Source: Guillardia theta CCMP2712
Taxonomy: Eukaryota > Protista > Cryptophyta
Length of the DNA stretch: 64,000 bases
Assembly: GCF_000315625.1 (NCBI RefSeq)
Contig: NW_005434654.1
Coordinates: forward strand, 252,273 to 316,272
Direction of reading: 5' to 3'
Both the position numbers and the translations under genes were made by a program. A model generated the notes under the pieces. The model did not search any database. It was not told the DNA's origin and saw only the letters and a program-made list of their open reading frames with translations. Shown in pieces: positions 37,372 to 51,400 of this stretch (its first letter is position 1; each line of letters opens with the position of its first letter).

Positions 37372-40350
37372 ATGGAAGGGATGGTTGTTGATGTCGCAAT
37401 GTCCACTAGTTCACCTGAACATATGCATACGAGAGTGTTCCATGATTACGTCTGCTTGAAACCATGAAAAGCACTTCTCAACTCACCACGATCATTTCCC
37501 ACTCCAGGTCAAGAAACTGTTGAAAGCAAGGCCATGGTCAGCGAAGGATGTAGCGTCAACGAGACCAGTCGGTCTCGACTCCAAGTCCAACACATTCTCT
37601 GGAAGGCGATTCCTCGGAGATCTGTCTCATCGAGACTCTGTGAGAAGCTTTGGTTCTACGTCGATTCGGCCGTCAACAGCCCCGGCTATCCGAAGGCCTA
37701 TCAGCGCATATACCCCTCATAACCCTTCAGCAGTCCCCGAATTCCCCCTCACTGCTCCGATCTCAACCTTCTCTACTTCAGAGGTGTCTATGATCCGGAG
37801 CTTGTACTATGCAAAGTGTAGAGACGTAGGCATCAAGCCCAACACGAATCAGTTCGACAAGTTTTCTTCGCTCTTCAACAACAGGTTCAAGCCGAATGAC
37901 TTGTACCTTAGCGGATGTGGAGTTGGACTAGAATTTGTGAAGACGCTTGTCAAGATATTTTCTGTTTCGAGTCTCTTGGTTACATGTCAGAAGTTGGACG
38001 TGTCGTGTAATCGCATAGGAGATCTGGGAGCAGAAGAGTTAGGGAAAATCCTGGTAGAGCCCGGGGTTCGTTTGGAGCATATTGACATGAGCTCGATCGG
38101 CATTGGAGCGAGTGGAGCTTCGCGACTCTTTGATTATCTCGCCCACAACAACACGTATGCTGCATCGTGCTTTCATTGCCGTTGGCTCTGTTTGTTCGCT
38201 GATCGTTGCTGCAGGGTGAAGGTGTTGATGTTGGGCACAGCGTCAGGGGACAGGAACATCATTGGGCCTGCGGGAATGGAGTCACTTTCTAACTGCCTAG
38301 CAGTCAACACGACCCTTACGAGTCTGAAGTTGGATGCAAACAGCATTGCCCTCAGGGTGAGTAGCGCAAGCGGAGCATTCCTTCATTCTGCTAATTTGCT
38401 CTGCCAGGGCATGCGATCATTGGCCCCAGGTCTGCACCTCAACACGTCCTTGCGATCATTGGATCTCTCATCCAACGGCCTCAAGAACAAGGCGATCAAG
38501 CTCCTGTCCGACACTCTCGCTGTCGGCGGCTTGACCTCGCTTGACCTCAGTCGCAATCAGATCTCGGACGAAGGAGCGAACTTTCTTGCAGACGCGTTGA
38601 AGGGAGACAACATCCTCCAGAGCCTCTGCCTTGACTTCAACGACATCGAGGGGCCCGGAGGGCAGGCGCTCGGACTCGGGCTGAAGTCCAACACTAGGCT
38701 GACGAGCTTATCCATGTGCCACAACAAGTTGGGATCCGCAGGGTTGTCAGGGCTAGCGGAGATGTTCCCGATCGTGGCCCCGTCGCCGACGAAAGCAGGA
38801 GGGAACGACACAGAGGGATCGTTCTGCATCATGGAAATCTTGAAGCTGAGCAACAACTCGATTTCCAACGAAGGAGCGAATCTGCTCTTCAACCGTCTCC
38901 GTGACAACTTCACTTTGAAGACGCTGGACTTGTCTCAGAACGCGATCTCGCAGCATGCTGCAAGAGAGATCGGCAGCTGTTTGAGGTCCAACTGCTGTCT
39001 GACGTCACTGAACCTGTCCATGAACAAGTTGCACTCTTTGGGAGTCTCGATGATCAGTTCGGGGCTTGAGCTCAACACAACGCTGAAGAAACTGTTTCTA
39101 AGGGATGTAAATATGAAAGATGAATGCGTCGGTCAGCTGGCTGTGTCTCTGAGATCAGGTGGGTAGGTCTGGGCTGGGATCGATGCGATGCTGAGTTTCC
39201 GAGCAGGAAAGAGTTTGATTGAGCTTGATATATCTTGGAATGACGTGTCTTACTCGAACAATAACATGGTCGTGGAGGTTGTCGAGGAGAACAAGGTGAG
39301 TGTTGATCATGGTCGATGCAACATCCACACATGATGAACGTCTCAGGCGCACTTTGAGTCGACGGCGATTCCCAGATTGACGAAGCAACTCAAGCATCTG
39401 TCCCCACTCGCTGACGAGTTGCCGAAAGTTCAGGCAAAGTGAGTGACGTGCATATGGCGGTTGCAAGTCTCACGTCGAATGCTCGTCCAGGATCAACAAC
39501 GAGATCATGATGAAACAGCAAACTCAGGAAGAAATTGACGACATCAAGCACAAGGTCCCTGCGCCCTTGCTGACACCTCGCCTTGTCCATCTCTTCTGCT
39601 CATGTGACAGCAGGCGGATGAGGAGAAGGTTGATGCTCAGGTACAGCTCGACAGCATCCGAGAGGATGCAGAGGCCACCAAGGAGAACCTGTTGAGGATC
39701 GAGAAGGTTATGTACCCCTCTTCCTCCCTCCTCCTCTCATCTTCTTGCCCCTGCCCCGGCAGGCCCTGAGTGAGGCGATCGAGTCGTTGAGGTCCAAGGA
39801 GCGGAAGTGCAGGGAGAAGGAGGAGAGTCAGGTGACGAGGAGGAGGTTCCAGCGTTGCTCCTCCACTCATCCCAACCCCCCAGTCGCGACTGCTCGAGGC
39901 TGTCCAGAAGTCGCACGAGCGGTTGCACGAGAGGCTTCAGGGGCTCAGAGATCGGCTGGCCGAGCAGGAGGACGGCGAGACAGGCGAGCTGCTCGCCCAG
40001 CTGGAACAGAGCAGGGAGGGGCTCAAGAGAGCGATGCAAGTGAGTCGTCCTTGCTAGTTGCGAATGCTAGCAGTGAGAGGCTGCAGGAGCGGGATCATGC
40101 GCAGGAGCAGCTTCAGAGGAGGGAGGGCGAGACGGCTCAGGACTCGTTTGTGATGACAGCAGCTCATCAGACGGGCAAGGGAGGGGACGACAAGGTAAGC
40201 ACTGTGAAACTCCGCCCAACGTTCCCTGACTTTCCCGCTGCCTCAGGCGAGCAAGAAGAACCAGGGCAGGATGAAGATAAGTCGTTCGCCCCCTCGATCC
40301 CCCAAGTCGTAGCGGGCGACGAGGCCCACTGCTCGAGTTCTTCTCCTCGT
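37372..40350 (+). CDS. Ribonuclease-inhibitor-type LRR protein with C-terminal coiled coil (ends approximate)
   Basis: Repeated ~28-aa units NxxLxxLxLxxNxIxxxGaxxL (e.g. LTSLDLSRNQISDEGANFLADALKGDNILQSLCLDFNDI), followed by E/K/R-rich exons. Confidence 0.85.
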
Positions 40351-40575
40351 GTTTCCATGTTCGCCTCCTGTTTATTCTTTGAATGTTCAAGTCCGTACAC
40401 AAGATTCTTCGCAGCTGCCATGATCTTGTTCCTCCTCTGCCCCTTCCACTTCCTGTCTCTGCCGTTACCCCCCCCCCGCTCCCATCCTCCCCCCCTCCCC
40501 CCCCCACCATCTTCATCCTCTTCCCTTCCCCGATGAATAAAAGTGGTCCCTCCCGCTGGTTCATTTTGAGCGCGG

Positions 40576-43396
40576 ATGCGTCCCATGGCGGCCTTCATGC
40601 CGGCGGTGTCGGTGATGATGGCGGAGAGCGCGCAAGCATCGTCCCGCCTCCCAGTCATGGCATGGAGCCATCGCTGCCTGCCCCCCCGTCCTCATCTCCA
40701 TCGCACCCGCCATCGTCTCCTGTGTCGCGCGCGCCCCAACGACGTCGGGGACTTGGGCCTGGTGAACAAGAAGGTTTTCCTTGATGCGCTGCAATGCTCG
40801 AGGCTCGGATGGTTTCGACGAGCAGGACAGATCGACGCATCCAAGGAGATCAGCGATAACGATCTCTACCTCATGCAGCTCGGCCAGCAGTTTGAGCAAG
40901 ACTGTCTTGCGCACATGTACCCGGAGTAAGGATGCACAACTTGCTCATTCAGAGGATGCTGATGTCTTGCTTGTGTTTTGGACTGCAGGGCGACGAAGGT
41001 GGAGAGTGTAAAGCTGAAGAAAGCATGCAAGGAAACGATGGAGCTGATGAGAGACATCGAAGCTGGCAAGGTCGAGCATGACAGTCCTGCCCTCTGTCAG
41101 GCTTCTTTCGTGTTCAACGAGGCGGTGGCAAGAGCGGATGTGCTGGAGTACCTCGGAGACGGTGAAGGAGGAGAAGGCCAAGAGAATTATCGAGGGTGAT
41201 GCTGCATGCATTCAGGAAGATGGGAGCTTGTAGAGATTAAGTGCTGTTCGGAGATGTCAAGGTCAGACTTGTTCGCCAAGTTGCCAGAGGGAGTAACGTG
41301 ATGGAGACAGCAAGGATTACCTTCTGGATGCGGCATACACCGCGGCGATCTTGAATTTGTCAGGAGTCAACATCGTCAAGGTGTATGAGGAGATTCTGGG
41401 AAGGGACGATGACTGAGAGGTCGAACGCAGGCGTCTATCATTGCCGTCTCCATGTCGTATAGGTTGGGGATGGACAAGAAATCTTTGTAGGGGAAGGGAG
41501 AGGTGAGAGGCAGAGTGATATGACTTGTTTTGCAAGGTTTGTCAAGTGTGATGTTTCCCAAGATCTCTTTGGCACAGAAGACCTGGTAAAGGTGACCAGA
41601 CTCCGCAAGTTGTTGAACTCTCAATCTTGCTGCGGCATCGCCAGAAAATTTCATCGGACAAAGGAGGGATCTCCCTATCTCAGACCATTGATGTGCGCTC
41701 GCCTGAGATCCAAGTTGGATTTTCTTCTCATGTCTTTCTGCAGATCACCAGAAGTGAAAATTGTCCAGACGCCATCCCGATGCCTTTCTGCAAGAAATGC
41801 CCTCAATTTCAGACCTGGTGATTTGTTTACCTCTCGACAACTCCCTCTCTCACGTTAGGAAACAGCTTTGAGAAGGATCTTAAGAATCCGATCTGGCAGC
41901 TTCCCAGGTGTGCGAGGTCAAAGATCTTTCCCTTTGACTGTTGACGCTCTTTCCAGGCTCACGGGCAGCAGGTTTGACCAAGTTGCCGCCCATGGCCTCG
42001 AGGTCCGTGTCGTCCATCATGTCATCACCCCTTTCCGTGCCGTTGAGATGCCGCAGATCGAGAAAGTCCCGCCCACACTTCTGACGAAGGATCAGCTGAA
42101 GTTCTATGAGAGTGTTATGAAGAAGGAGGTGATCGTCGATGTCAGAAAGCTCAAACAGGTAGAGGAGGGAGAGTATCCTGTGAGGTTCTCATTGCTTTTA
42201 GCACCTGCAAGAGACGAAGGGACCATTCCTCTACCTAGACTTCGAGAGTATCAATCCTCTGTATCCCTGGTTGCTGTGAGGGGAGTCAACGCCTTTGGTG
42301 ACCAGTGAAACAGGTTCGACGACCTCGCTCCCTGGCAACCGATGGTAATGTGAATGTGCTCTATGAAAGACAGCGGAATGACGATCGGAGGCAGATCACA
42401 CAGTTCTCTTTGCACAAACGAGCTGATGTCGACAGTGAGTTGCAACATATGGAGTTTCTCGCCGACGCCAAGTCAGTTGATGCTTCCACATGCTGGAGTC
42501 CTAAATCTGCTCAGGGCAGATTTCCGTCTTGATTTATGTGACTATCTCCTTGAGTGCCTTGGGGATCAGGGATCAATCTTTGTCTACTCGTCGTTTGAGA
42601 AGACACACTTGAAGGTCATAATCCCTCCTCCTCCTCGGTCAAAATCCTCCCCCGACCCCCTCCCATGCTGTTATCTAACAACCTCTTACGCTTGCAGGCA
42701 TTCGCTCAGAGGTTCCCCTCACGTGCACAGCAGGTGAAAGCTGACGCATCTTATCATAACGTGTAACGGTTCTTTACAGATCGAGGAAGTGATATCCCGC
42801 CTCTTCGACCTCGAGAAGGCAACACAGCAAACCATCCCAACACCTGGCGCTTATCCCTTCTTCTTTCTTTCAGGTCATCAGGGAGACTATAACGCACCCG
42901 GAGTTCAAAGGAAGCTCTTCCCTCAAAGTCACTCTTCCCGTCCTCGTCCCATCCTATCAGTCTGCCTACAAGGTCAGCGAGTGTGTCCGAGCGAGTTTTC
43001 CTCACCTACCGGAGCAGGAGATGTCCATCAAGAACGGTTTTGAGGCCTCCAGTGCATTCCAGCGCCTTCGAATTGCAGATGCAGAGGTAGGCGATGTTCT
43101 GATGCTTCCGCTCTCATTCACCCTATGGCCCTCCCTCCCCTCCACTCCTCCTCACCCGCCTTGTTGTGATGATTTCTCCACCTGTACTTATATCTCGAGT
43201 CTCGCTCAACTTGCTCGTCGCCCCCTTTCCCCGCCTCCTTCCTGTCTTCCAGCATTTTGCACCATTTGACCCTGCTGTCAAGGAATCGAAAGAGATCCGC
43301 AAGAATCTGAAAGATTATTGTGCCTTGGATACTCTGGCGATGGTCGAGTTGCATTCTGCCATCTTGGCGATCAGTGGGAATTCGGCCAAGTTGTGA
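40576..43396 (+). CDS. DUF2779-family protein: Cas4/RecB-like PD-(D/E)xK nuclease plus RNase H-fold DEDDy exonuclease (many introns)
   Basis: KKVFLDALQCSRLGWF, LGQQFE, QASF...ARADVL, WELVEIKC, FCKKCPQF, FLYLDFES..PWFDDLAPWQPMITQFSLH, GSIFVYSSFEK, SRLFDL, SLKVTLPVL, IKNGFEAS, IRKNLKDYCALDTLAMV. Confidence 0.85.
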
Positions 43397-43639
43397 TCAT
43401 CCTTCAAACCCGTTTCTTCCTCTCAACTCATGTCGCTCTCTTCTCTCCTCATTCCTTGTCATGTATGCTACTAGTCTCCTCGTCGTAATCCTCAACTCTT
43501 CCTGCTCTCTCCTCCTGTTTCGTTTGCTCGTTTAACGGTTCTGTAAAAGTGAGCTAATGTCATCCAACTTGGTTCGTTTCGATCTCATCCATTTTTCTCT
43601 GCGCAGAAGCAGCTGTAATCGATTCTTTGCAGATCTTAG

Positions 43640-44520
43640 GATCTCTTGTTTTCAAACATGTCCGCATACCATCCAACAACATTCCGGTCGTCTGAGCATC
43701 CCAAAAGTATCAGGAAACCTGATGCGAAAGCAGAAGTGAAACTGACCTGAAGTATATTGTCGACGTGTTTCTTCTTCTTAGTCTTTGAAAGTCTGTTGGC
43801 AGCCCTTAAGTGTTCAAGTTGTTTGCAAGCTTGAAACAAGTGAGATGATGAAGCTCGCTCTAATTTCACCTAGAGCAGATCCGCCGATGCATTCCCTTCC
43901 AAGAGCTGTCTCTTTCTGGGCATCTTTCATCTCATCGTCTGCCTGCAAAGACCCAGTGTTAACAGCGGCTCATCTTTGTAAGTTTGTTCACTCAGCAAGC
44001 GCTCTTAGATGTTGCTCACCTCTTCTCCTTCCAAATCTGCTTGCGACTGTGCCAGTGACGCCTGGTGCAAATACATGCTCGCAAGATCCTTCTCCTTCTT
44101 TGTTGCACTGCGTCGCCGCTGTTCTTTCTCCTCCAGCCGCTTCTCTACTTCTTTTGCCCTCTCTTTGGCCAGGCTCAGCCAGATTTGACCCAAATGGGAA
44201 CTTTCCTTCCGGGCCTCGTTCGAGATCCGCTCACAAGCGTCAACATCCATTTGCCTGCATGAAATGCTAGCTTTGATCAAGCTTGTGTCATGAGGTCTTG
44301 GTTGGGTCTTCTTCACCTCATGATCATTCGGCTTGGATGAGAACATCTCGCTCAACGTGTGAGAAACAGTATCCCTTGCTTCTTCTGCCATGCGGTAGAT
44401 CGTTTCCTCTTCGCCTTCCTGCCCTTTTCGTCGTCCTCGTCCTGCGCTCTCTAGCGGCTCCACAAGCATTCCCATGATGAAAACTATCAGCAGGAGCAGC
44501 CCTCTTTTTGCCCGCGGCAT
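43640..44520 (-). CDS. Signal-peptide hypothetical helical protein (multi-exon)
   Basis: MPRAKRGLLLLIVFIMGMLVEPLESA leader followed by charged helical exons. Confidence 0.5.
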
Positions 44521-46784: not shown

Positions 46785-47897
46785 CTACAACCTCTTCCCG
46801 TGATACTCCGTATGCTGGAATGCAGAATAACCCCAGTAAGTAGAAATCTCGAACGGTTCTCCGATTTCAACTCCTTCAGCAGAAACAGTGGCGATTTGAA
46901 TCTGAAATATGTTAACAAATATAACACACACAATGAGATACAATACCTTAGTGCTGGACTTCGTGTTCCTGTAATACAGAACTCTGAGACAGTTTTCCAT
47001 CACTTGCTTCGCTTCCTCCTTGCTCAAATTTGTGCCAGCCTTTCTCATTAGGGGCAAGCAAACATAATTTCCAAAGCTGGTTGCAATGATGTCGTCCTCA
47101 TACATGGTGCCAATCAAATCCACCGCTCCAAGAAATCTATCCGGAACTCAATCAGAAGATCGTATTAATTCAAGCGTTAAACTCACGGTTTCCCATCACG
47201 AAATCCAGCCACAACCAGCTCATTCCAGAGCGGATCAAACTTATTACGTCTATTCCAATGAGTTACGATCTATACATCAAGAAATCTCAAAGTTAATCAC
47301 CTGTTGTACATGACTCTTCCAAGGTACTGATGGATATCTCGAGGGGTCATGTTGCATCCATCATCATACGCTGAGTCTGAAGTACTGCAACGGGATCAGG
47401 AAGAAAAATCTCAGGGGATAGTGATAAACCTCATCTCTCTCAACATGGAGGAAATCTTTTGAAAGTCACTAAGATCTCCACTTGCACCGACAACAGTAAA
47501 ATCTCCAACTTTTTCCAATCGTTTTACTGTTCTAAATCTCGCAAGACTTCCATATGAGCCTGTGGCAGCTTGTTAGCGGGCCAAGGAGGTATAATCTCGA
47601 CAGAAATGAAAAAAAGATGGAAGTGATCTTGCTGATATTCTGAAATAAACAAAAGAGAAGACAATAATTTGAATTCGGTACAAAAGACTCACCAAGCGTG
47701 TCACAAGCCAGCATCACTCCACCATTGTACTTGATACCAAGAACGCCCGTTCCAGTCACAATAGGCTGCTGTGTGCGGGTGGAAGGCTCAGCAACTGGCT
47801 TTGTCTTCATGAAAGGCTGAGAAACAAAGCCAAAAGGCCGGGAGAGAGACTGATCTCCTCCTGGGAGGAGCGGATTGTGTGCACCGAACGCTGCCAT
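46785..47897 (-). CDS. PSMB4: 20S proteasome subunit beta-7
   Basis: TQQPIVTGTGVLGIKYNGGVMLACDTL|ASYGSLARF ... DLIGTMYEDDIIATSFGNYVCLPLMR...CLRVLYYR. Confidence 0.93.
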
Positions 47898-48456
47898 CTT
47901 GAAGGACAGCTGTCTCAGGTTTCGTTTTAGTCAACAAGAAGACCCGCCTCTGAATGATCATGGACCCGGTGCCCTTCCGGGTTCCCGGCCCGGACCCTTC
48001 AGACTCAGTTGGTTCGAATGATTTCATTAGTGGCTCCCCGACGGGTTTTAGTCAATTTTGGCGCTAAATTTTGGTTTGAGGTTCCATGTAGTGCAGCATG
48101 GTGGTGGAAGGCACCGGAAAACCATGGCGGCAGGAAGGAACGATACAGGAGGAAGGAGGATCAGAGACAGATACAGAGACAGCTGAAGAGGAGGGAAGGA
48201 GGAATAGAAACAGAGACAGAGAAAGATTTGAAATAGAGAATGCGAGAGCGAGTTTGGGCTGGACGGCAGATCAATATCAATAAGTTTGGGCTCTTCTTGG
48301 ATTTAAGAAGGTGGCTCACACACCAGTCTCAGATCGATATAGACAAGATATACTCAAAAGTAATGTATCAATCTATCGGGCAACACCAGACCAGCAATGA
48401 GATCGGACTGTGCAATCCCTTCAGCTCTGACCCTTGTTCGCTACCAGGACGATCCC

Positions 48457-51400
48457 ATGCCTCCCAAACGCAAGGCAGAAGAGGCCTTGGATGAGCACAA
48501 CCACTCTAGCAGGCGCTCCAAGTCAGAGCAGCAGGTCCACACAGCCTTCCTCTACACCTCTTCCTGACTTGAAGCAGGGGAGCGCCAGTACCCATGAGCC
48601 GAATGCAGATGACAACGAATACCCCTGGATTCGACGCATCCGCTTGGACAACTTCATGTGCCATAACAAGCTGACGGTGGACTTTCACAAGTACATCAAC
48701 ATCATCAATGGTCAAAACGGAACGGGCAAGAGCGCTGTGCTGACGGCGCTGGCTATCGCGCTAGGCTGCAGGTAAAACTCATGACAACAAGAAGCGTGTA
48801 TGTTGTAGTTTGTTTTCCTCTCTTACGATGTGCTTGGTCTGATCACGCTCCTAGGCCTAAGCTGACTGGTCGGTGCGATGCTCTCAAGGACCTGATCGGG
48901 CCATATGCGGACAGGAGCATCGTTGAGGTTGTGATTGTACAGTGTAGAGATGATCCTTATCGTGGAAGCAACTCCCGTGAGAACTGGGACTTTGGGAAAG
49001 AGGTCATCATCGAGAGAATAATCCAAAAGACAGGCGCCTCAGCGTTCAAGATCATGACAGAGGATAGGACCGTGGTGTCGACCAAGAAAGAAGATCTGAT
49101 GAAGATCCTACAGCATTTCAACTACCAGATCGAGAACCCCGTGCATGTTCTCTCGCAGAAAGACGCCAAGACTCTTCTGCAGTCAGCGACCAAGAAAAGC
49201 TTTTACGACTTCTTTTTCGAAGCAACGAGGTTGAAGAATGCGTATGATCTTATCAACGAGAACAAGCATCTCTCCGAGCAGCTGATGGAAATCATCAACA
49301 CGAAGGAAAAGAAGAATGCAGATTGGGAGCAGAACATCTTCACGCCAGCCAAGGAGGCGTATGACAGCATGGTAGACGCCAGAAGATTGAGTGAGGAGAA
49401 GTTCGAGCTAGCGAGAGAGCTGGCCTGGGCTGAAGTGCATGAGAAGAAGCGTACTGTCAAGAAGTGGCGATCCAAGGCTGAGGTTGTAGAGGAAGAGAAA
49501 CGATCATTACACGCAGATCTTGAACAGAGCGATAGAAAGATTGAACAACACAATGCAGTCCTTGAAAAATTGAGCTTAAAAATTGTCGAGACGAATAAGG
49601 CTACACCTGAAATCAACGAGAGGAAGGCTGCCATCGAGCACACGATCAAGGAACAAAAAGAGGAGTACAACAAGCTCAACTTCTCTCGCAACGAACTGCA
49701 AACACAGAACATGACTCTTGAGAAGGATATCGATCTCCTTGAGCAGGAAGTACAGTCCAAGCAAGCTACCGGATCTAAGCCAGCCAAAGTGTCACTGAAC
49801 GCACTCAAGGTCCGAGACAGAGTCCCTTGGACGCTCAAGGCGGTGATTGATCGATTTGCAACAGGTCAGAAAGGAGGAGCTCGAGGCAGAAATAGAAGAT
49901 TACGGTACACAAAGACAGGAAGCAGAAGTACAAGTCGTCTCGCTACGAAATGAGCTGAGTCAGGCTGAGGAAGAGGTAAGCTTGCACGTGCAGCCCTGGC
50001 TGGGCTGATACGCTTGCGTTGATCACGTGGATGCTGGAGTCTCACTTGGAATGCAGTCATCCATCCTGAGACGAGAACTCGACAGAGATGAGAAAGAACA
50101 CGACAGGTTGAAGCTCATCGGAAGCGGAGACAGACTTGCATCTTTCGGGCCTGAGGTGAAGCAGATGGCAGAGCTCATCTCACGTAATCAAGCTCGCTTT
50201 GGAGGGAATCCCCCCATAGGACCCGTGGGAGCTTACATCAAGCTGAAAGACCAGCGATGGTCCAAAGCCGTCGGGAATGCTCTGGGTCGGTTTGCATCCT
50301 ACTTTTTGGTTCGCAAGAACGCAGACAAGGACACCTGCATGTCTCTTTGGGAAGAGAAAAATCCCAGACGGAGATCGGACGGGAGGTCGTCGCTACAGTT
50401 TGCAAGCATGAACTCCGACCAGTTTGACAAGAACATCTGCCCGTACCGTGATCACAATACTATCATGGACGTGATCGAGATCGACAGTCAAGACGCTTTC
50501 ACGAAGAATGTGATCCTCAACTTTCTGATTGACACTTGTTCGATCAATGAGATCCATGTGGCTGTTAGCTTTCAAGAGGCTACAGGCATTATCCGCAGAC
50601 GACTAGAATCAGTGACTTTGTCCAATGGTGTTATGCACGAGATTCGTAGAGAAGCGTACAGCTTGGACTCAGAGCAGCGTAATGTCGATCGCTGGCAGAG
50701 GGCAAAGCGGGATGGATCGGAAGTGACGAAACCTGTGTACAGCAAAGCTTACTTCTCCGTCGACGTGTCGGGAGAGGTTGAGAGAGTGAAGAGAAAAATC
50801 ATCGACACCAAGAGCAAGCTGGAGAGCGCGAAAGCAAAGCTTGAGTCTCTGAAGTCTGAGAGAAGCGAATGGGAGAGAAGAGCAGTGGGAGCTACGAAGG
50901 AGCTGAACAAGAAGCAGAGGTACGGAGGGAGTGCTCAAGGCAGGCACGAGATGGAGAGGCTGACACGCGTGAGCAGAGAGCTGCATGAGTTGAGAGAGCA
51001 AATCGAAGAAGTGATGAGCGAAGAGAGCCTGAATGTCAACACCGATGGAACAGCTGTCTTGCAGGAGGTTTGCCTTGACTCTCATTGCCTCTCAGTCGTG
51101 AGTGCATGGAGCTGACTGCGAGATTGCAGGAGATCGCAACCAAGCAAGATAGCATCTTCAGGAACAAGAAGGTCATAGCAGAGCTGTCGAAGAAGCTTTC
51201 GGAACAAGAGGATAGGATCAAGACCTCGATGAAGAACAAGGAGGAAATACAAAAAGAAATATCGGTCGTGGCAAAAGATATCAAGCTTATTCAAGAGGAG
51301 CTCCAGGATACTCGAGAGAAGCTTAGCAAGGCAACGAGTACGAAGAACAAGATTTCCATGAAGATCAGCGACCTGGAGGGCAGGCTAGAAGCCGCAAGGA

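What the first reader, a model, noticed from the sequence alone, without database searches (positions are those of the whole stretch)
40576..43396. Intron-rich eukaryotic copy of a prokaryotic Cas4-like + DEDDy dual nuclease (DUF2779) with an organelle-type leader
Seen: an N-terminal Cys plus distal CxxC (QCSR...CKKCPQF; the fourth Cys not confidently placed), PD-(D/E)xK-like ARADVL...VEIK, and exonuclease motifs LDFES, YSSFEK and YCALD, all apparently intact across more than 12 short introns. A ~55-aa Arg/His/Ala-rich N-terminal extension begins MRPMAAF. Established: DUF2779 is a mainly bacterial family of unknown function with an RNase H-like fold; split Cys motifs around a RecB-type nuclease form the Fe-S staple of Cas4/AddB/Dna2. 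Inference: an old horizontal transfer, now possibly an organellar DNA repair or processing nuclease. No CRISPR array or other cas genes are nearby.
Basis: partly seen in the sequence, partly recalled or inferred. Interest (0 to 1): 0.72.

Follow-up and report, generated by a model that had tools for sequence, protein, structure and literature searches.

The report
Algal double nuclease of bacterial ancestry
A spliced, expressed nuclear gene of the alga Guillardia theta encodes a two-headed DNA-cutting enzyme of a mostly bacterial family (DUF2779), with an extra front piece that looks like an address label for an organelle. The family's build and this gene's database entry were already public, so the finding is solid but modest.

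Summary
Window 40576-43396 (+) is a real, expressed gene of 20 exons and 19 short introns (median 50 nt, one GC-AG) that encodes 564 aa. Contigs from two RNA-type runs carry the spliced form, and a DNA-type run carries the introns.

It is GUITHDRAFT_105385 of Guillardia theta CCMP2712, already named "DUF2779 domain-containing protein" in UniRef. That public model is wrong at three places.

The missing fourth Cys is a codon split by an intron, which gives C...CxxCx5C. Predicted folds match Cas4 (Z 10.7) and the proofreading exonuclease domain of family-B DNA polymerases (Z 16.3).

Eight eukaryotic rows form one clade (98/99) inside a bacterial subfamily (100/100). They include two further G. 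theta paralogs that share intron positions with this gene. This supports an old bacterial origin, but the donor is unresolved.

Only this copy and its environmental relatives carry basic N-terminal leaders of 25-146 aa. Bacterial homologs have none, and the two paralogs have acidic N-termini. Organelle import is therefore plausible but untested, and the start codon is not fixed.

The Cas4-plus-DEDDy build of DUF2779 was published in 2014 and 2026. Another reader of this scan noted a DUF2779 copy elsewhere in this genome.

The parts
40576..43396 (+). Coding part of the gene (GUITHDRAFT_105385), 20 exons, 564 codons plus stop. Exons: 40576-40925, 40989-41161, 41216-41261, 41311-41380, 41431-41486, 41537-41591, 41645-41692, 41744-41817, 41866-41907, 41957-42002, 42057-42158, 42202-42269, 42314-42344, 42395-42471, 42515-42614, 42698-42733, 42780-42818, 42874-42972, 43018-43086, 43283-43396
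   Evidence: Frame and splice-site search. Joints and record coordinates of transcript-type contigs in runs X1 and X6. Identity with the public protein P0040 outside three mis-modelled spots.
40576..40755 (+). N-terminal leader of about 57-60 residues. It has a moderately hydrophobic start (residues 4-15), a possible A-x-A cleavage site near residue 21, then a basic Arg/His/Pro/Ser-rich stretch.
   Evidence: Hydropathy and charge. There is no counterpart in bacterial homologs, whose core starts at residue 7-24. A near-identical strain keeps the ORF from Met4, and 3 of its 4 substitutions fall in the leader.
40756..42002 (+). Exons 1 (rest) to 10: Cas4-like PD-(D/E)xK nuclease half.
   Evidence: AlphaFold model pLDDT 91.2. 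VIA Z 10.7 to the Cas4 part of 7mi5_A, 10.2 to 4ic1, 9.5 to MGME1, 8.7 to EXO5. PADLOC Cas4 models E 4.9e-4.
40789..40803 (+). First cluster cysteine (Cys74) in the N-terminal motif.
   Evidence: Consensus Cys in 32 aligned homologs.
41131..41145 (+). Metal-binding Asp167 of the PD-(D/E)xK site.
   Evidence: Nearly invariant column.
41230..41241 (+). Glu181-x-Lys183 of the PD-(D/E)xK site.
   Evidence: Lys invariant, Glu nearly invariant.
41645..41692 (+). Exon 7, a 16-codon linker exon missing from the public model.
   Evidence: The joint 41692>41744 and record coordinates of the X6 contig require it, with a donor at 41592. Difference to P0040.
41789..41866 (+). CxxCx5C (Cys282, 285, 291 in the transcript model; 264, 267, 273 in P0040). 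The last Cys codon is split by intron 8 (41818-41865).
   Evidence: The joint 41817>41866 is seen in X1 and X6. These columns are invariant or nearly invariant.
42057..43396 (+). Exons 11 to 20: DEDDy 3'-5' exonuclease half (Pfam DUF2779).
   Evidence: PF11074 94.6 bits on P0040 and 23.4 bits exon-wise in the genome. Model pLDDT 94.4. VIA Z 16.3-14 to exonuclease domains of family-B polymerases. Foldseek also finds DnaQ epsilon, TREX and RNase T.
42235..42249 (+). Exo I motif, Asp367 and Glu369.
   Evidence: Invariant in 32 homologs.
42585..42602 (+). Exo II-like motif, Tyr437 and Glu441.
   Evidence: Invariant in 32 homologs.
42819..42873 (+). The only GC..AG intron. The public model reads through it and so loses a conserved segment.
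   Evidence: There is no GT in the interval. X6 record coordinates fix exon 17 at 39 nt. Comparison with P0040.
42874..42972 (+). Exon 18 with the conserved HP.F.G..S.K..LP segment, replaced by intron-derived residues in the public model.
   Evidence: Both of its intron boundaries are shared with paralogs C64 and C109.
43316..43330 (+). Exo III motif, Tyr539 and Asp543 (the 'y' of DEDDy).
   Evidence: Nearly invariant columns.
43397..43695 (+). 3' untranslated region covered by the transcript contigs, which then leave the genome sequence at 43695.
   Evidence: tables 7 and 8.

Best explanation
Shown. This is the nuclear gene GUITHDRAFT_105385 of the cryptophyte Guillardia theta. It is transcribed and spliced from 20 exons into a 564-aa protein of the DUF2779 family. 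The front half has the fold and the D...ExK and C...CxxCx5C residues of Cas4-type, Fe-S-cluster-bearing PD-(D/E)xK exonucleases. The back half has the fold and the D-E-E-D plus Tyr residues of DnaQ/PolB-type 3'-5' exonucleases. It belongs to a eukaryotic clade nested in a bacterial subfamily.

Inferred. The gene came from a bacterium long ago, gained introns, and duplicated. This copy gained a basic N-terminal leader that takes the protein into a DNA-holding organelle. The complex plastid is the likeliest, either the stroma or the periplastidal space with the nucleomorph; the mitochondrion is less likely. There the two active sites would trim DNA ends from both polarities: 5' strands or flaps by the Cas4-like site and 3' ends by the DEDDy site. 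That would serve repair, recombination-dependent replication or clearance of linear DNA, much as MGME1, EXO5 and DNA2 do in mitochondria.
For: - Gene and expression.
- Identity: P0040 and its names; PF11074 at 94.6 bits; colinear exon matches to the family profile.
- Catalytic and cluster residues are conserved across 32 homologs.
- Folds: Cas4, MGME1 and EXO5 at Z 10.7 to 8.7; PolB-type exonuclease at Z 16.3.
- Ancestry: eukaryotic clade 98/99 inside a 25-row subfamily 100/100. The family's nearest Atlas clusters are 80-100% bacterial.
- Age: intron positions are shared with paralogs on contigs C64 and C109.
- Leader: basic extensions of 25-146 aa in this copy and its environmental relatives, several with an early hydrophobic stretch. 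Bacteria have none, and the two paralogs have acidic N-termini.
- The cryptophyte targeting rule is described in PMC5443833.
Against: - No biochemical activity is known for any DUF2779 protein.
- No targeting predictor could be run. The hydrophobic stretch is only moderate (mean hydropathy 1.8).
- The two transcript contigs start at 40582 and 40599, after the proposed ATG at 40576, so the true start could be Met4 or, at worst, Met14/15, which would remove the signal-like part.
- Raw RNA reads were very few: 6 reads from about 6% of run X16.
- Cas4 models score below their curated cut-offs.
- The eukaryote label of the environmental relatives is inferred from introns, leaders and a SAP domain, not from named organisms.
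- The substrate could be RNA.
Confidence: 0.55

Rival explanations
1. Same enzyme, but not organellar. The N-terminal stretch is not a targeting signal, or is not translated. The protein works in the nucleus or cytosol, for example in nuclear DNA repair or RNA turnover.
For: Transcript contigs begin after the first ATG. The hydrophobic stretch is weak. The two paralogs of the same genome clearly lack leaders and have acidic N-termini typical of nuclear proteins. One relative (P0005) carries a SAP DNA-binding domain that is common in nuclear proteins.
Against: The ORF upstream of the conserved core is kept open in a second strain with mostly leader-specific substitutions. Basic extensions recur in most relatives of this copy and are absent from bacteria. 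There is an in-frame stop just upstream of the ATG, so the extension is not read-through of upstream sequence.
Confidence: 0.2
2. Same enzyme, targeted to the mitochondrion only. The leader would be a presequence rather than a bipartite plastid signal.
For: The leader is Arg-rich and has few acidic residues. The closest structural analogues with known roles (MGME1, EXO5, DNA2) act on mitochondrial DNA. Relative P0044 has only a short basic presequence.
Against: The very N-terminus is hydrophobic and is followed by an A-x-A site. Several relatives have clearer signal-peptide-like starts followed by 100-aa transit-like regions, as expected for complex plastids.
Confidence: 0.12
3. An immunity-type nuclease retained from bacteria (a solo-Cas4-like role), acting against viruses or foreign DNA rather than in genome maintenance.
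For: A 2026 paper files the family under immunity connections. One close bacterial relative (P0046) sits next to a type I restriction R subunit. One Atlas cluster includes phage members.
Against: No conserved neighbour was found in 80 bacterial loci. PADLOC gives no match other than generic Cas4 models. There are no cas genes or arrays here. The gene is quasi-essential in a minimal Mycoplasma, and in M. bovis a transposon mutant in the gene is listed in the same table as mutants in replication and repair genes; both points suit housekeeping.
Confidence: 0.08
4. Bacterial contamination or a dead gene fragment.
For: None beyond the bacterial look of the family.
Against: 19 spliceosomal introns, spliced transcripts in two studies, an open frame, conserved catalytic residues, ordinary eukaryotic neighbours (an LRR protein, a proteasome beta subunit, an SMC-like gene), and a 934-kb contig.
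Confidence: 0.01

Closest known systems
Bacterial DUF2779 / PF11074 proteins, e.g. MMSYN1_0389 of JCVI-syn3.0 (PMC13621843) and family F.17 of the RNase H-like survey (PMC3985635)
   Same: Same two-domain build and same conserved residues. Full-length colinear alignment at 24-36% identity. The Pfam model is passed.
   Different: Nuclear and intron-split, with an N-terminal leader of about 57-60 aa. All four cluster cysteines are kept, with CxxCx5C spacing, whereas MMSYN1_0389 keeps only two and another bacterial subfamily has Cx5Cx5C.
CRISPR-associated Cas4 (PF01930, TIGR00372; structures 4IC1, 7MI5, 8D3L)
   Same: Same fold (Z 10.7-9.1), the D...ExK site, and one N-terminal plus three C-terminal cysteines with the same x2 and x5 spacing.
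   Different: Scores below the curated cut-offs (16.7 vs 22.7 bits; TIGR00372 did not match this protein at E <= 0.01). No cas genes or array. Fused to an exonuclease. About 60 residues longer, with inserts.
TM0106 / COG2251 RecB-like nucleases (TIGR03491, PF13482)
   Same: A parallel architecture: a Cas4-like domain followed by an RNase H-like exonuclease domain. Weak HMM match of 31.8 bits.
   Different: Far below the cut-off of 97.45 bits. A different Pfam family covers the exonuclease half.
Organellar PD-(D/E)xK exonucleases MGME1, EXO5 and DNA2
   Same: Fold similarity at Z 9.5, 8.7 and 7.4. EXO5 and DNA2 also hold an Fe-S cluster stapled by split cysteine motifs (established knowledge). 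They have roles on organelle DNA ends.
   Different: No sequence-family match at Pfam E <= 1. Those enzymes have no fused 3'-5' exonuclease, and they have a different evolutionary origin.
3'-5' exonuclease domain of family-B DNA polymerases (DEDDy)
   Same: Best structural match: Z 16.3-14, 165-178 residues aligned. Same Tyr-x3-Asp third motif.
   Different: No polymerase domain. The second-motif acidic residue is Glu in the whole DUF2779 family.

Membership tests
DUF2779 (Pfam PF11074) | Score above Pfam's gathering cut-off (23.3 bits) | tested here: met
   94.6 bits on the public protein. 23.4 bits on the exon-split genome match, and 19.1 bits on exon 15 alone.
DUF2779 (Pfam PF11074) | Full-length colinearity with bacterial members, including the N-terminal Cas4-like half | tested here: met
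   Exon pieces map in order to positions 8-488 of a 492-position profile built from 80 homologs. 24-36% identity to the bacterial homologs aligned (42-32% to the eukaryote-type relatives).
DUF2779 (Pfam PF11074) | Conserved Asp, Glu-x-Lys and D-E-E-D plus Tyr residues | tested here: met
   All are present in invariant or nearly invariant columns.
Cas4 (PF01930 / TIGR00372) | Score above the curated cut-offs | tested here: not met
   PF01930 gives 16.7 bits against 22.7. TIGR00372 does not match this protein at E <= 0.01. The PDB profile search finds Cas4 only at E 0.23.
Cas4 (PF01930 / TIGR00372) | Four cysteines, C...CxxCx5C, around a RecB-type site | tested here: met
   Cys74 plus Cys282/285/291 in transcript numbering. 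Cluster binding itself cannot be tested here.
Cas4 (PF01930 / TIGR00372) | Cas4 fold | tested here: met
   Z 10.7 (rmsd 5.0, 181 aligned) to 7mi5_A and Z 10.2 to 4ic1_D. Foldseek E 9.6e-4 to 8d3l_J.
Cas4 (PF01930 / TIGR00372) | Linkage to cas genes or a CRISPR array | tested here: not met
   Eukaryotic nuclear locus. Only short low-complexity repeats lie within 24 kb, and the neighbours are ordinary.
DEDDy 3'-5' exonucleases (DnaQ-like) | DnaQ-like fold with Exo I, II and III residues and Tyr | tested here: met
   Z 16.3-14 to PolB-type exonuclease domains. Residues D367, E369, E441, Y539 and D543. The second motif has Glu instead of the usual Asp.
DEDDy 3'-5' exonucleases (DnaQ-like) | 3'-5' exonuclease activity | not testable with these tools
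   Needs an enzyme assay.
Bipartite targeting signal of cryptophyte complex-plastid proteins | Cleavable signal peptide at the N-terminus | tested here: inconclusive
   Hydrophobic residues 4-15 (mean hydropathy 1.8) and an A-x-A site near residue 21. No predictor was available, and the transcript 5' end is not resolved.
Bipartite targeting signal of cryptophyte complex-plastid proteins | Transit-peptide-like region after the signal peptide | tested here: met
   Residues ~22-56 are basic, rich in Ser/Pro/Arg/His, and have no acidic residue before position 56. This is judged by composition only.
Bipartite targeting signal of cryptophyte complex-plastid proteins | Aromatic residue at +1 of the transit part (stroma) versus none (periplastidal space or nucleomorph); rule as described in PMC5443833 | tested here: inconclusive
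   At the best-guess cleavage site the +1 residue is Ser, which would point to the periplastidal compartment. The site itself is a guess.
EXO5 / MGME1 families | Sequence-family membership | tested here: not met
   No Pfam match at E <= 1 other than DUF2779 and Cas_Cas4. The resemblance is at fold level only.

The most novel reading that the evidence does not exclude
One ancient bacterial DUF2779 gene founded a eukaryotic clade that then split into two lines. One line carries a leader and is imported into the complex plastid. In cryptophytes this could be the periplastidal compartment, where the nucleomorph lies, or the stroma, where the protein would act as a dedicated two-polarity DNA-end nuclease of an endosymbiont-derived genome. 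The other line (the two G. theta paralogs with acidic N-termini) serves the host nucleus. That would make DUF2779 a previously unrecognised organelle-genome maintenance factor of algae with red-type complex plastids, and would give the family its first biological role.
Probability: 0.3. Interest if true: 0.6.

Novelty: new member of a known kind. Interest (0 to 1): 0.38.

Why it matters
DUF2779 is widespread in bacteria. It is quasi-essential in the minimal Mycoplasma cell and still has no demonstrated activity. A eukaryotic clade with targeting-type leaders offers a tractable way to find its substrate: the compartment the protein enters says which genome, or which RNA pool, it works on. For cryptophyte biology it adds a candidate to the short list of host-encoded factors that maintain plastid, nucleomorph or mitochondrial DNA. 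On the practical side, the public gene model of GUITHDRAFT_105385 is wrong at three places, one of which removes a conserved segment of the exonuclease domain. Anyone expressing or modelling the protein should use the transcript-supported exons given here.

Tried and rejected
- My first exon guesses had wrong boundaries. I corrected them with a frame-aware splice search and then with transcript joints. The transcripts added exon 7, moved the donor of intron 6 to 41592, and moved the last acceptor to 43283.
- Pfam on single exons is nearly blind: only exon 15 scored, at 19.1 bits.
- Aligning all 20 exon peptides with one long homolog scattered the fragments, so that alignment was not used.
- The word search with P0005 was flooded by low-complexity words and returned 5 hits.
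The bacterial alignment A3 worked but samples one subfamily only.
- The HMMER profile search of PDB sequences gave only E 0.23 to Cas4, so fold comparison was used instead.
- Cluster look-ups gave no organism names for the environmental relatives. I do not name them as haptophytes or green algae, although I considered it.
- The sister position of Gemmatimonadaceae-labelled proteins seen in the quick tree (support 82) collapsed in the careful tree (49/43). No donor is claimed.
- No conserved gene neighbour was found in 80 bacterial loci.
- The joined spliced protein was not sent to any search, family or fold tool. Those steps used exon references and the public model P0040.
Full report
**Scope and limits.** The spliced model was searched exon by exon, by reference. 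No joined exon model was given to any search, family or fold tool. Inside my own scripts the exons were concatenated from the window file for three purposes only: to check the frame, to compare with the public protein, and to add one row to a local tree. Folding and word searches used the public model P0040, which a cluster look-up returned.

**The gene.** The + strand between 40576 and 43396 carries short open segments in changing frames, separated by stretches of about 50 nt. A search for splice sites that keep the conserved peptides in frame gave a nearly unique solution. The transcript data then corrected it at three points.

The final model has 20 exons and 19 introns of 43-196 nt (median 50). 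Eighteen introns are GT..AG and one is GC..AG (42819-42873). The coding sequence is 1695 nt, or 564 codons plus stop. An in-frame TGA lies 9 nt before the ATG at 40576.

**Expression.**
- Contigs of two RNA-type runs from different studies (X1, X6) carry the spliced form. Fifteen joints are listed, each a GT..AG skip at my coordinates.
- The record coordinates of the 2708-nt X6 contig fix the remaining four joints. These include the GC-AG intron, the extra exon 41645-41692, and the acceptor at 43283.
- Contigs of run X12 keep the introns, as genomic DNA should.
- Weak points: the kind of X1 and X6 is a guess by the tool. The one run on record as RNA (X16) gave only 6 reads from about 6% of its data. 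The contigs start at 40582 and 40599, just after the proposed ATG, so Met1 versus Met4 (or later) is open.

**Public record.** The cluster of the exon-1 ORF holds P0040. This is EKX48756.1 / XP_005835736.1, hypothetical protein GUITHDRAFT_105385 of Guillardia theta CCMP2712, named "DUF2779 domain-containing protein" by UniRef. It also has 564 residues, but that is by coincidence. Compared with the transcripts it has three errors:
- It lacks exon 7 plus 6 nt.
- It retains intron 10 (42003-42056).
- It reads through the GC-AG intron, which replaces 18 conserved residues of exon 18.

No paper in the library cites the accession.

**Family.**
- Pfam PF11074 scores 94.6 bits on P0040, and Cas_Cas4 scores 16.7 bits, below its cut-off.
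- The genome holds three PF11074 loci: this one and two on contigs C64 and C109.
- A profile built from 80 full-length homologs matches the exon pieces in strict order from position 8 to 488.
- In an alignment of 32 homologs, the following are invariant or nearly so and are all present here: the first Cys, Asp167, Glu181-x-Lys183, the three later Cys, Asp367-x-Glu369, Gln-x-Ser-x-His, Tyr437...Glu441, Asp468, and Tyr539-x3-Asp543.
- The eukaryotic rows and their nearest bacterial relatives share CxxCx5-6C spacing. The other bacterial rows have Cx5Cx5C.

**Folds.**
- The N-terminal half (pLDDT 91.2) aligns best with Cas4: Z 10.7 and 10.2. MGME1, lambda-type exonucleases, RecE, EXO5, AdnA/AddB and Dna2 follow, at Z 9.5 to 7.1.
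- The C-terminal half (pLDDT 94.4) aligns with the exonuclease domain of family-B DNA polymerases at Z 16.3-14. Foldseek also lists DnaQ epsilon, TREX1/2, RNase T and ERI1.
- Coordinates are not returned, so the cluster geometry could not be measured.

**Relatives.**
- Exon 1 alone finds only five proteins among 1.84 billion representatives, none of them bacterial.
- Profile and word searches then recovered further relatives:
  - a cryptophyte ortholog from Hanusia phi (EukProt);
  - environmental proteins at 40-58% identity (local alignments);
  - bacterial proteins of about 486 aa at 28-32%, some labelled Gemmatimonadaceae or Terriglobales.
- Two of the environmental genes are interrupted by gaps of 70-130 nt, one carries a SAP domain, and most have long N-terminal extensions. 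I treat them as eukaryotic, unnamed.
- In a careful tree of 56 rows, the eight eukaryotic rows form one clade (ultrafast bootstrap 98, SH-aLRT 99) inside a 25-row subfamily (100/100). The bacterial sister is unresolved (49/43).
- Within the clade, the two G. theta paralogs branch first.
- They share intron positions with this gene at the start of exon 14, both ends of exon 18, and the start of exon 19. The introns are therefore older than the duplication.
- Kinetoplastid DUF2779 genes exist but could not be fetched.

**Leader.**
- Bacterial proteins begin the conserved core at residue 7-24.
- This protein has about 57-60 extra residues: 9 Arg and no Lys against 3 acidic residues, a hydrophobic start at residues 4-15, and an A-x-A site near residue 21.
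- Its environmental relatives have 25-146 extra residues of the same basic, Ser/Thr/Ala/Pro/Arg-rich kind, several with clearer signal-like starts.
- The two paralogs instead have acidic N-terminal regions.
- A second strain keeps the leader ORF open, and most of its substitutions fall in the leader.
- By the cryptophyte rule (PMC5443833), a non-aromatic +1 residue would point to the periplastidal compartment. The cleavage site is only my guess.

**Mechanism.** The shown and inferred parts are kept apart under Best explanation. In short, two nuclease sites of opposite polarity sit on one chain, which suggests trimming of DNA ends. The leader suggests that this happens on an organelle genome. 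A conserved partner gene is not seen in bacteria, and no defence-system model other than generic Cas4 matches.

**Known versus new.** The fusion of a Cas4-like and a DEDDy domain in DUF2779 was noted in 2014 and analysed in 2026 for a Mycoplasma protein. What is new here:
- the corrected gene model;
- the three-copy family in G. theta with shared introns;
- the single eukaryotic clade;
- the leader restricted to one lineage.

Noticed in passing
window 43695-43760: Both transcript contigs (X1, X6) leave the genome sequence at 43695 and run on for 255 letters. By eye, their first letters read like the window from about 43751, which would mean a skip of about 55 nt in the 3' UTR without a canonical GT..AG.
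   Followed up: partly
window 40300-40439: A separate 329-nt contig of run X6 covers 40300-40439 and then continues with letters that, by eye, match the + strand near 40138. That is a backward joint in the region between this gene and its upstream neighbour. It could be an assembly artefact, a repeat or a back-splice.
   Followed up: no
G000:C64 about 170800-174060 (L004 3832-7059) and G000:C109 about 160340-163500 (L005, minus strand): Two further DUF2779 paralogs, 45-60% identical to this gene exon by exon. Both keep the Cys and catalytic motifs, have acidic N-terminal regions instead of a leader, and contain long microsatellite-rich introns.
   Followed up: partly
L091 855-6464 (groundwater metagenome contig): One of the closest bacterial relatives (P0046) lies two genes downstream of a type I restriction enzyme R subunit, which hints at a defence-island setting in that bacterium.
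   Followed up: no
L006 101-2143 (P0005): A relative on a 70% G+C, intron-free, gene-dense contig carries a C-terminal SAP DNA-binding domain in addition to both nuclease halves.
   Followed up: no
window 37520-39166, 46785-47897, 48434-48775: The neighbours are ordinary nuclear genes: a leucine-rich-repeat protein upstream, and a proteasome beta-type subunit (minus strand) and an SMC-like ATPase N-terminus downstream.
   Followed up: no
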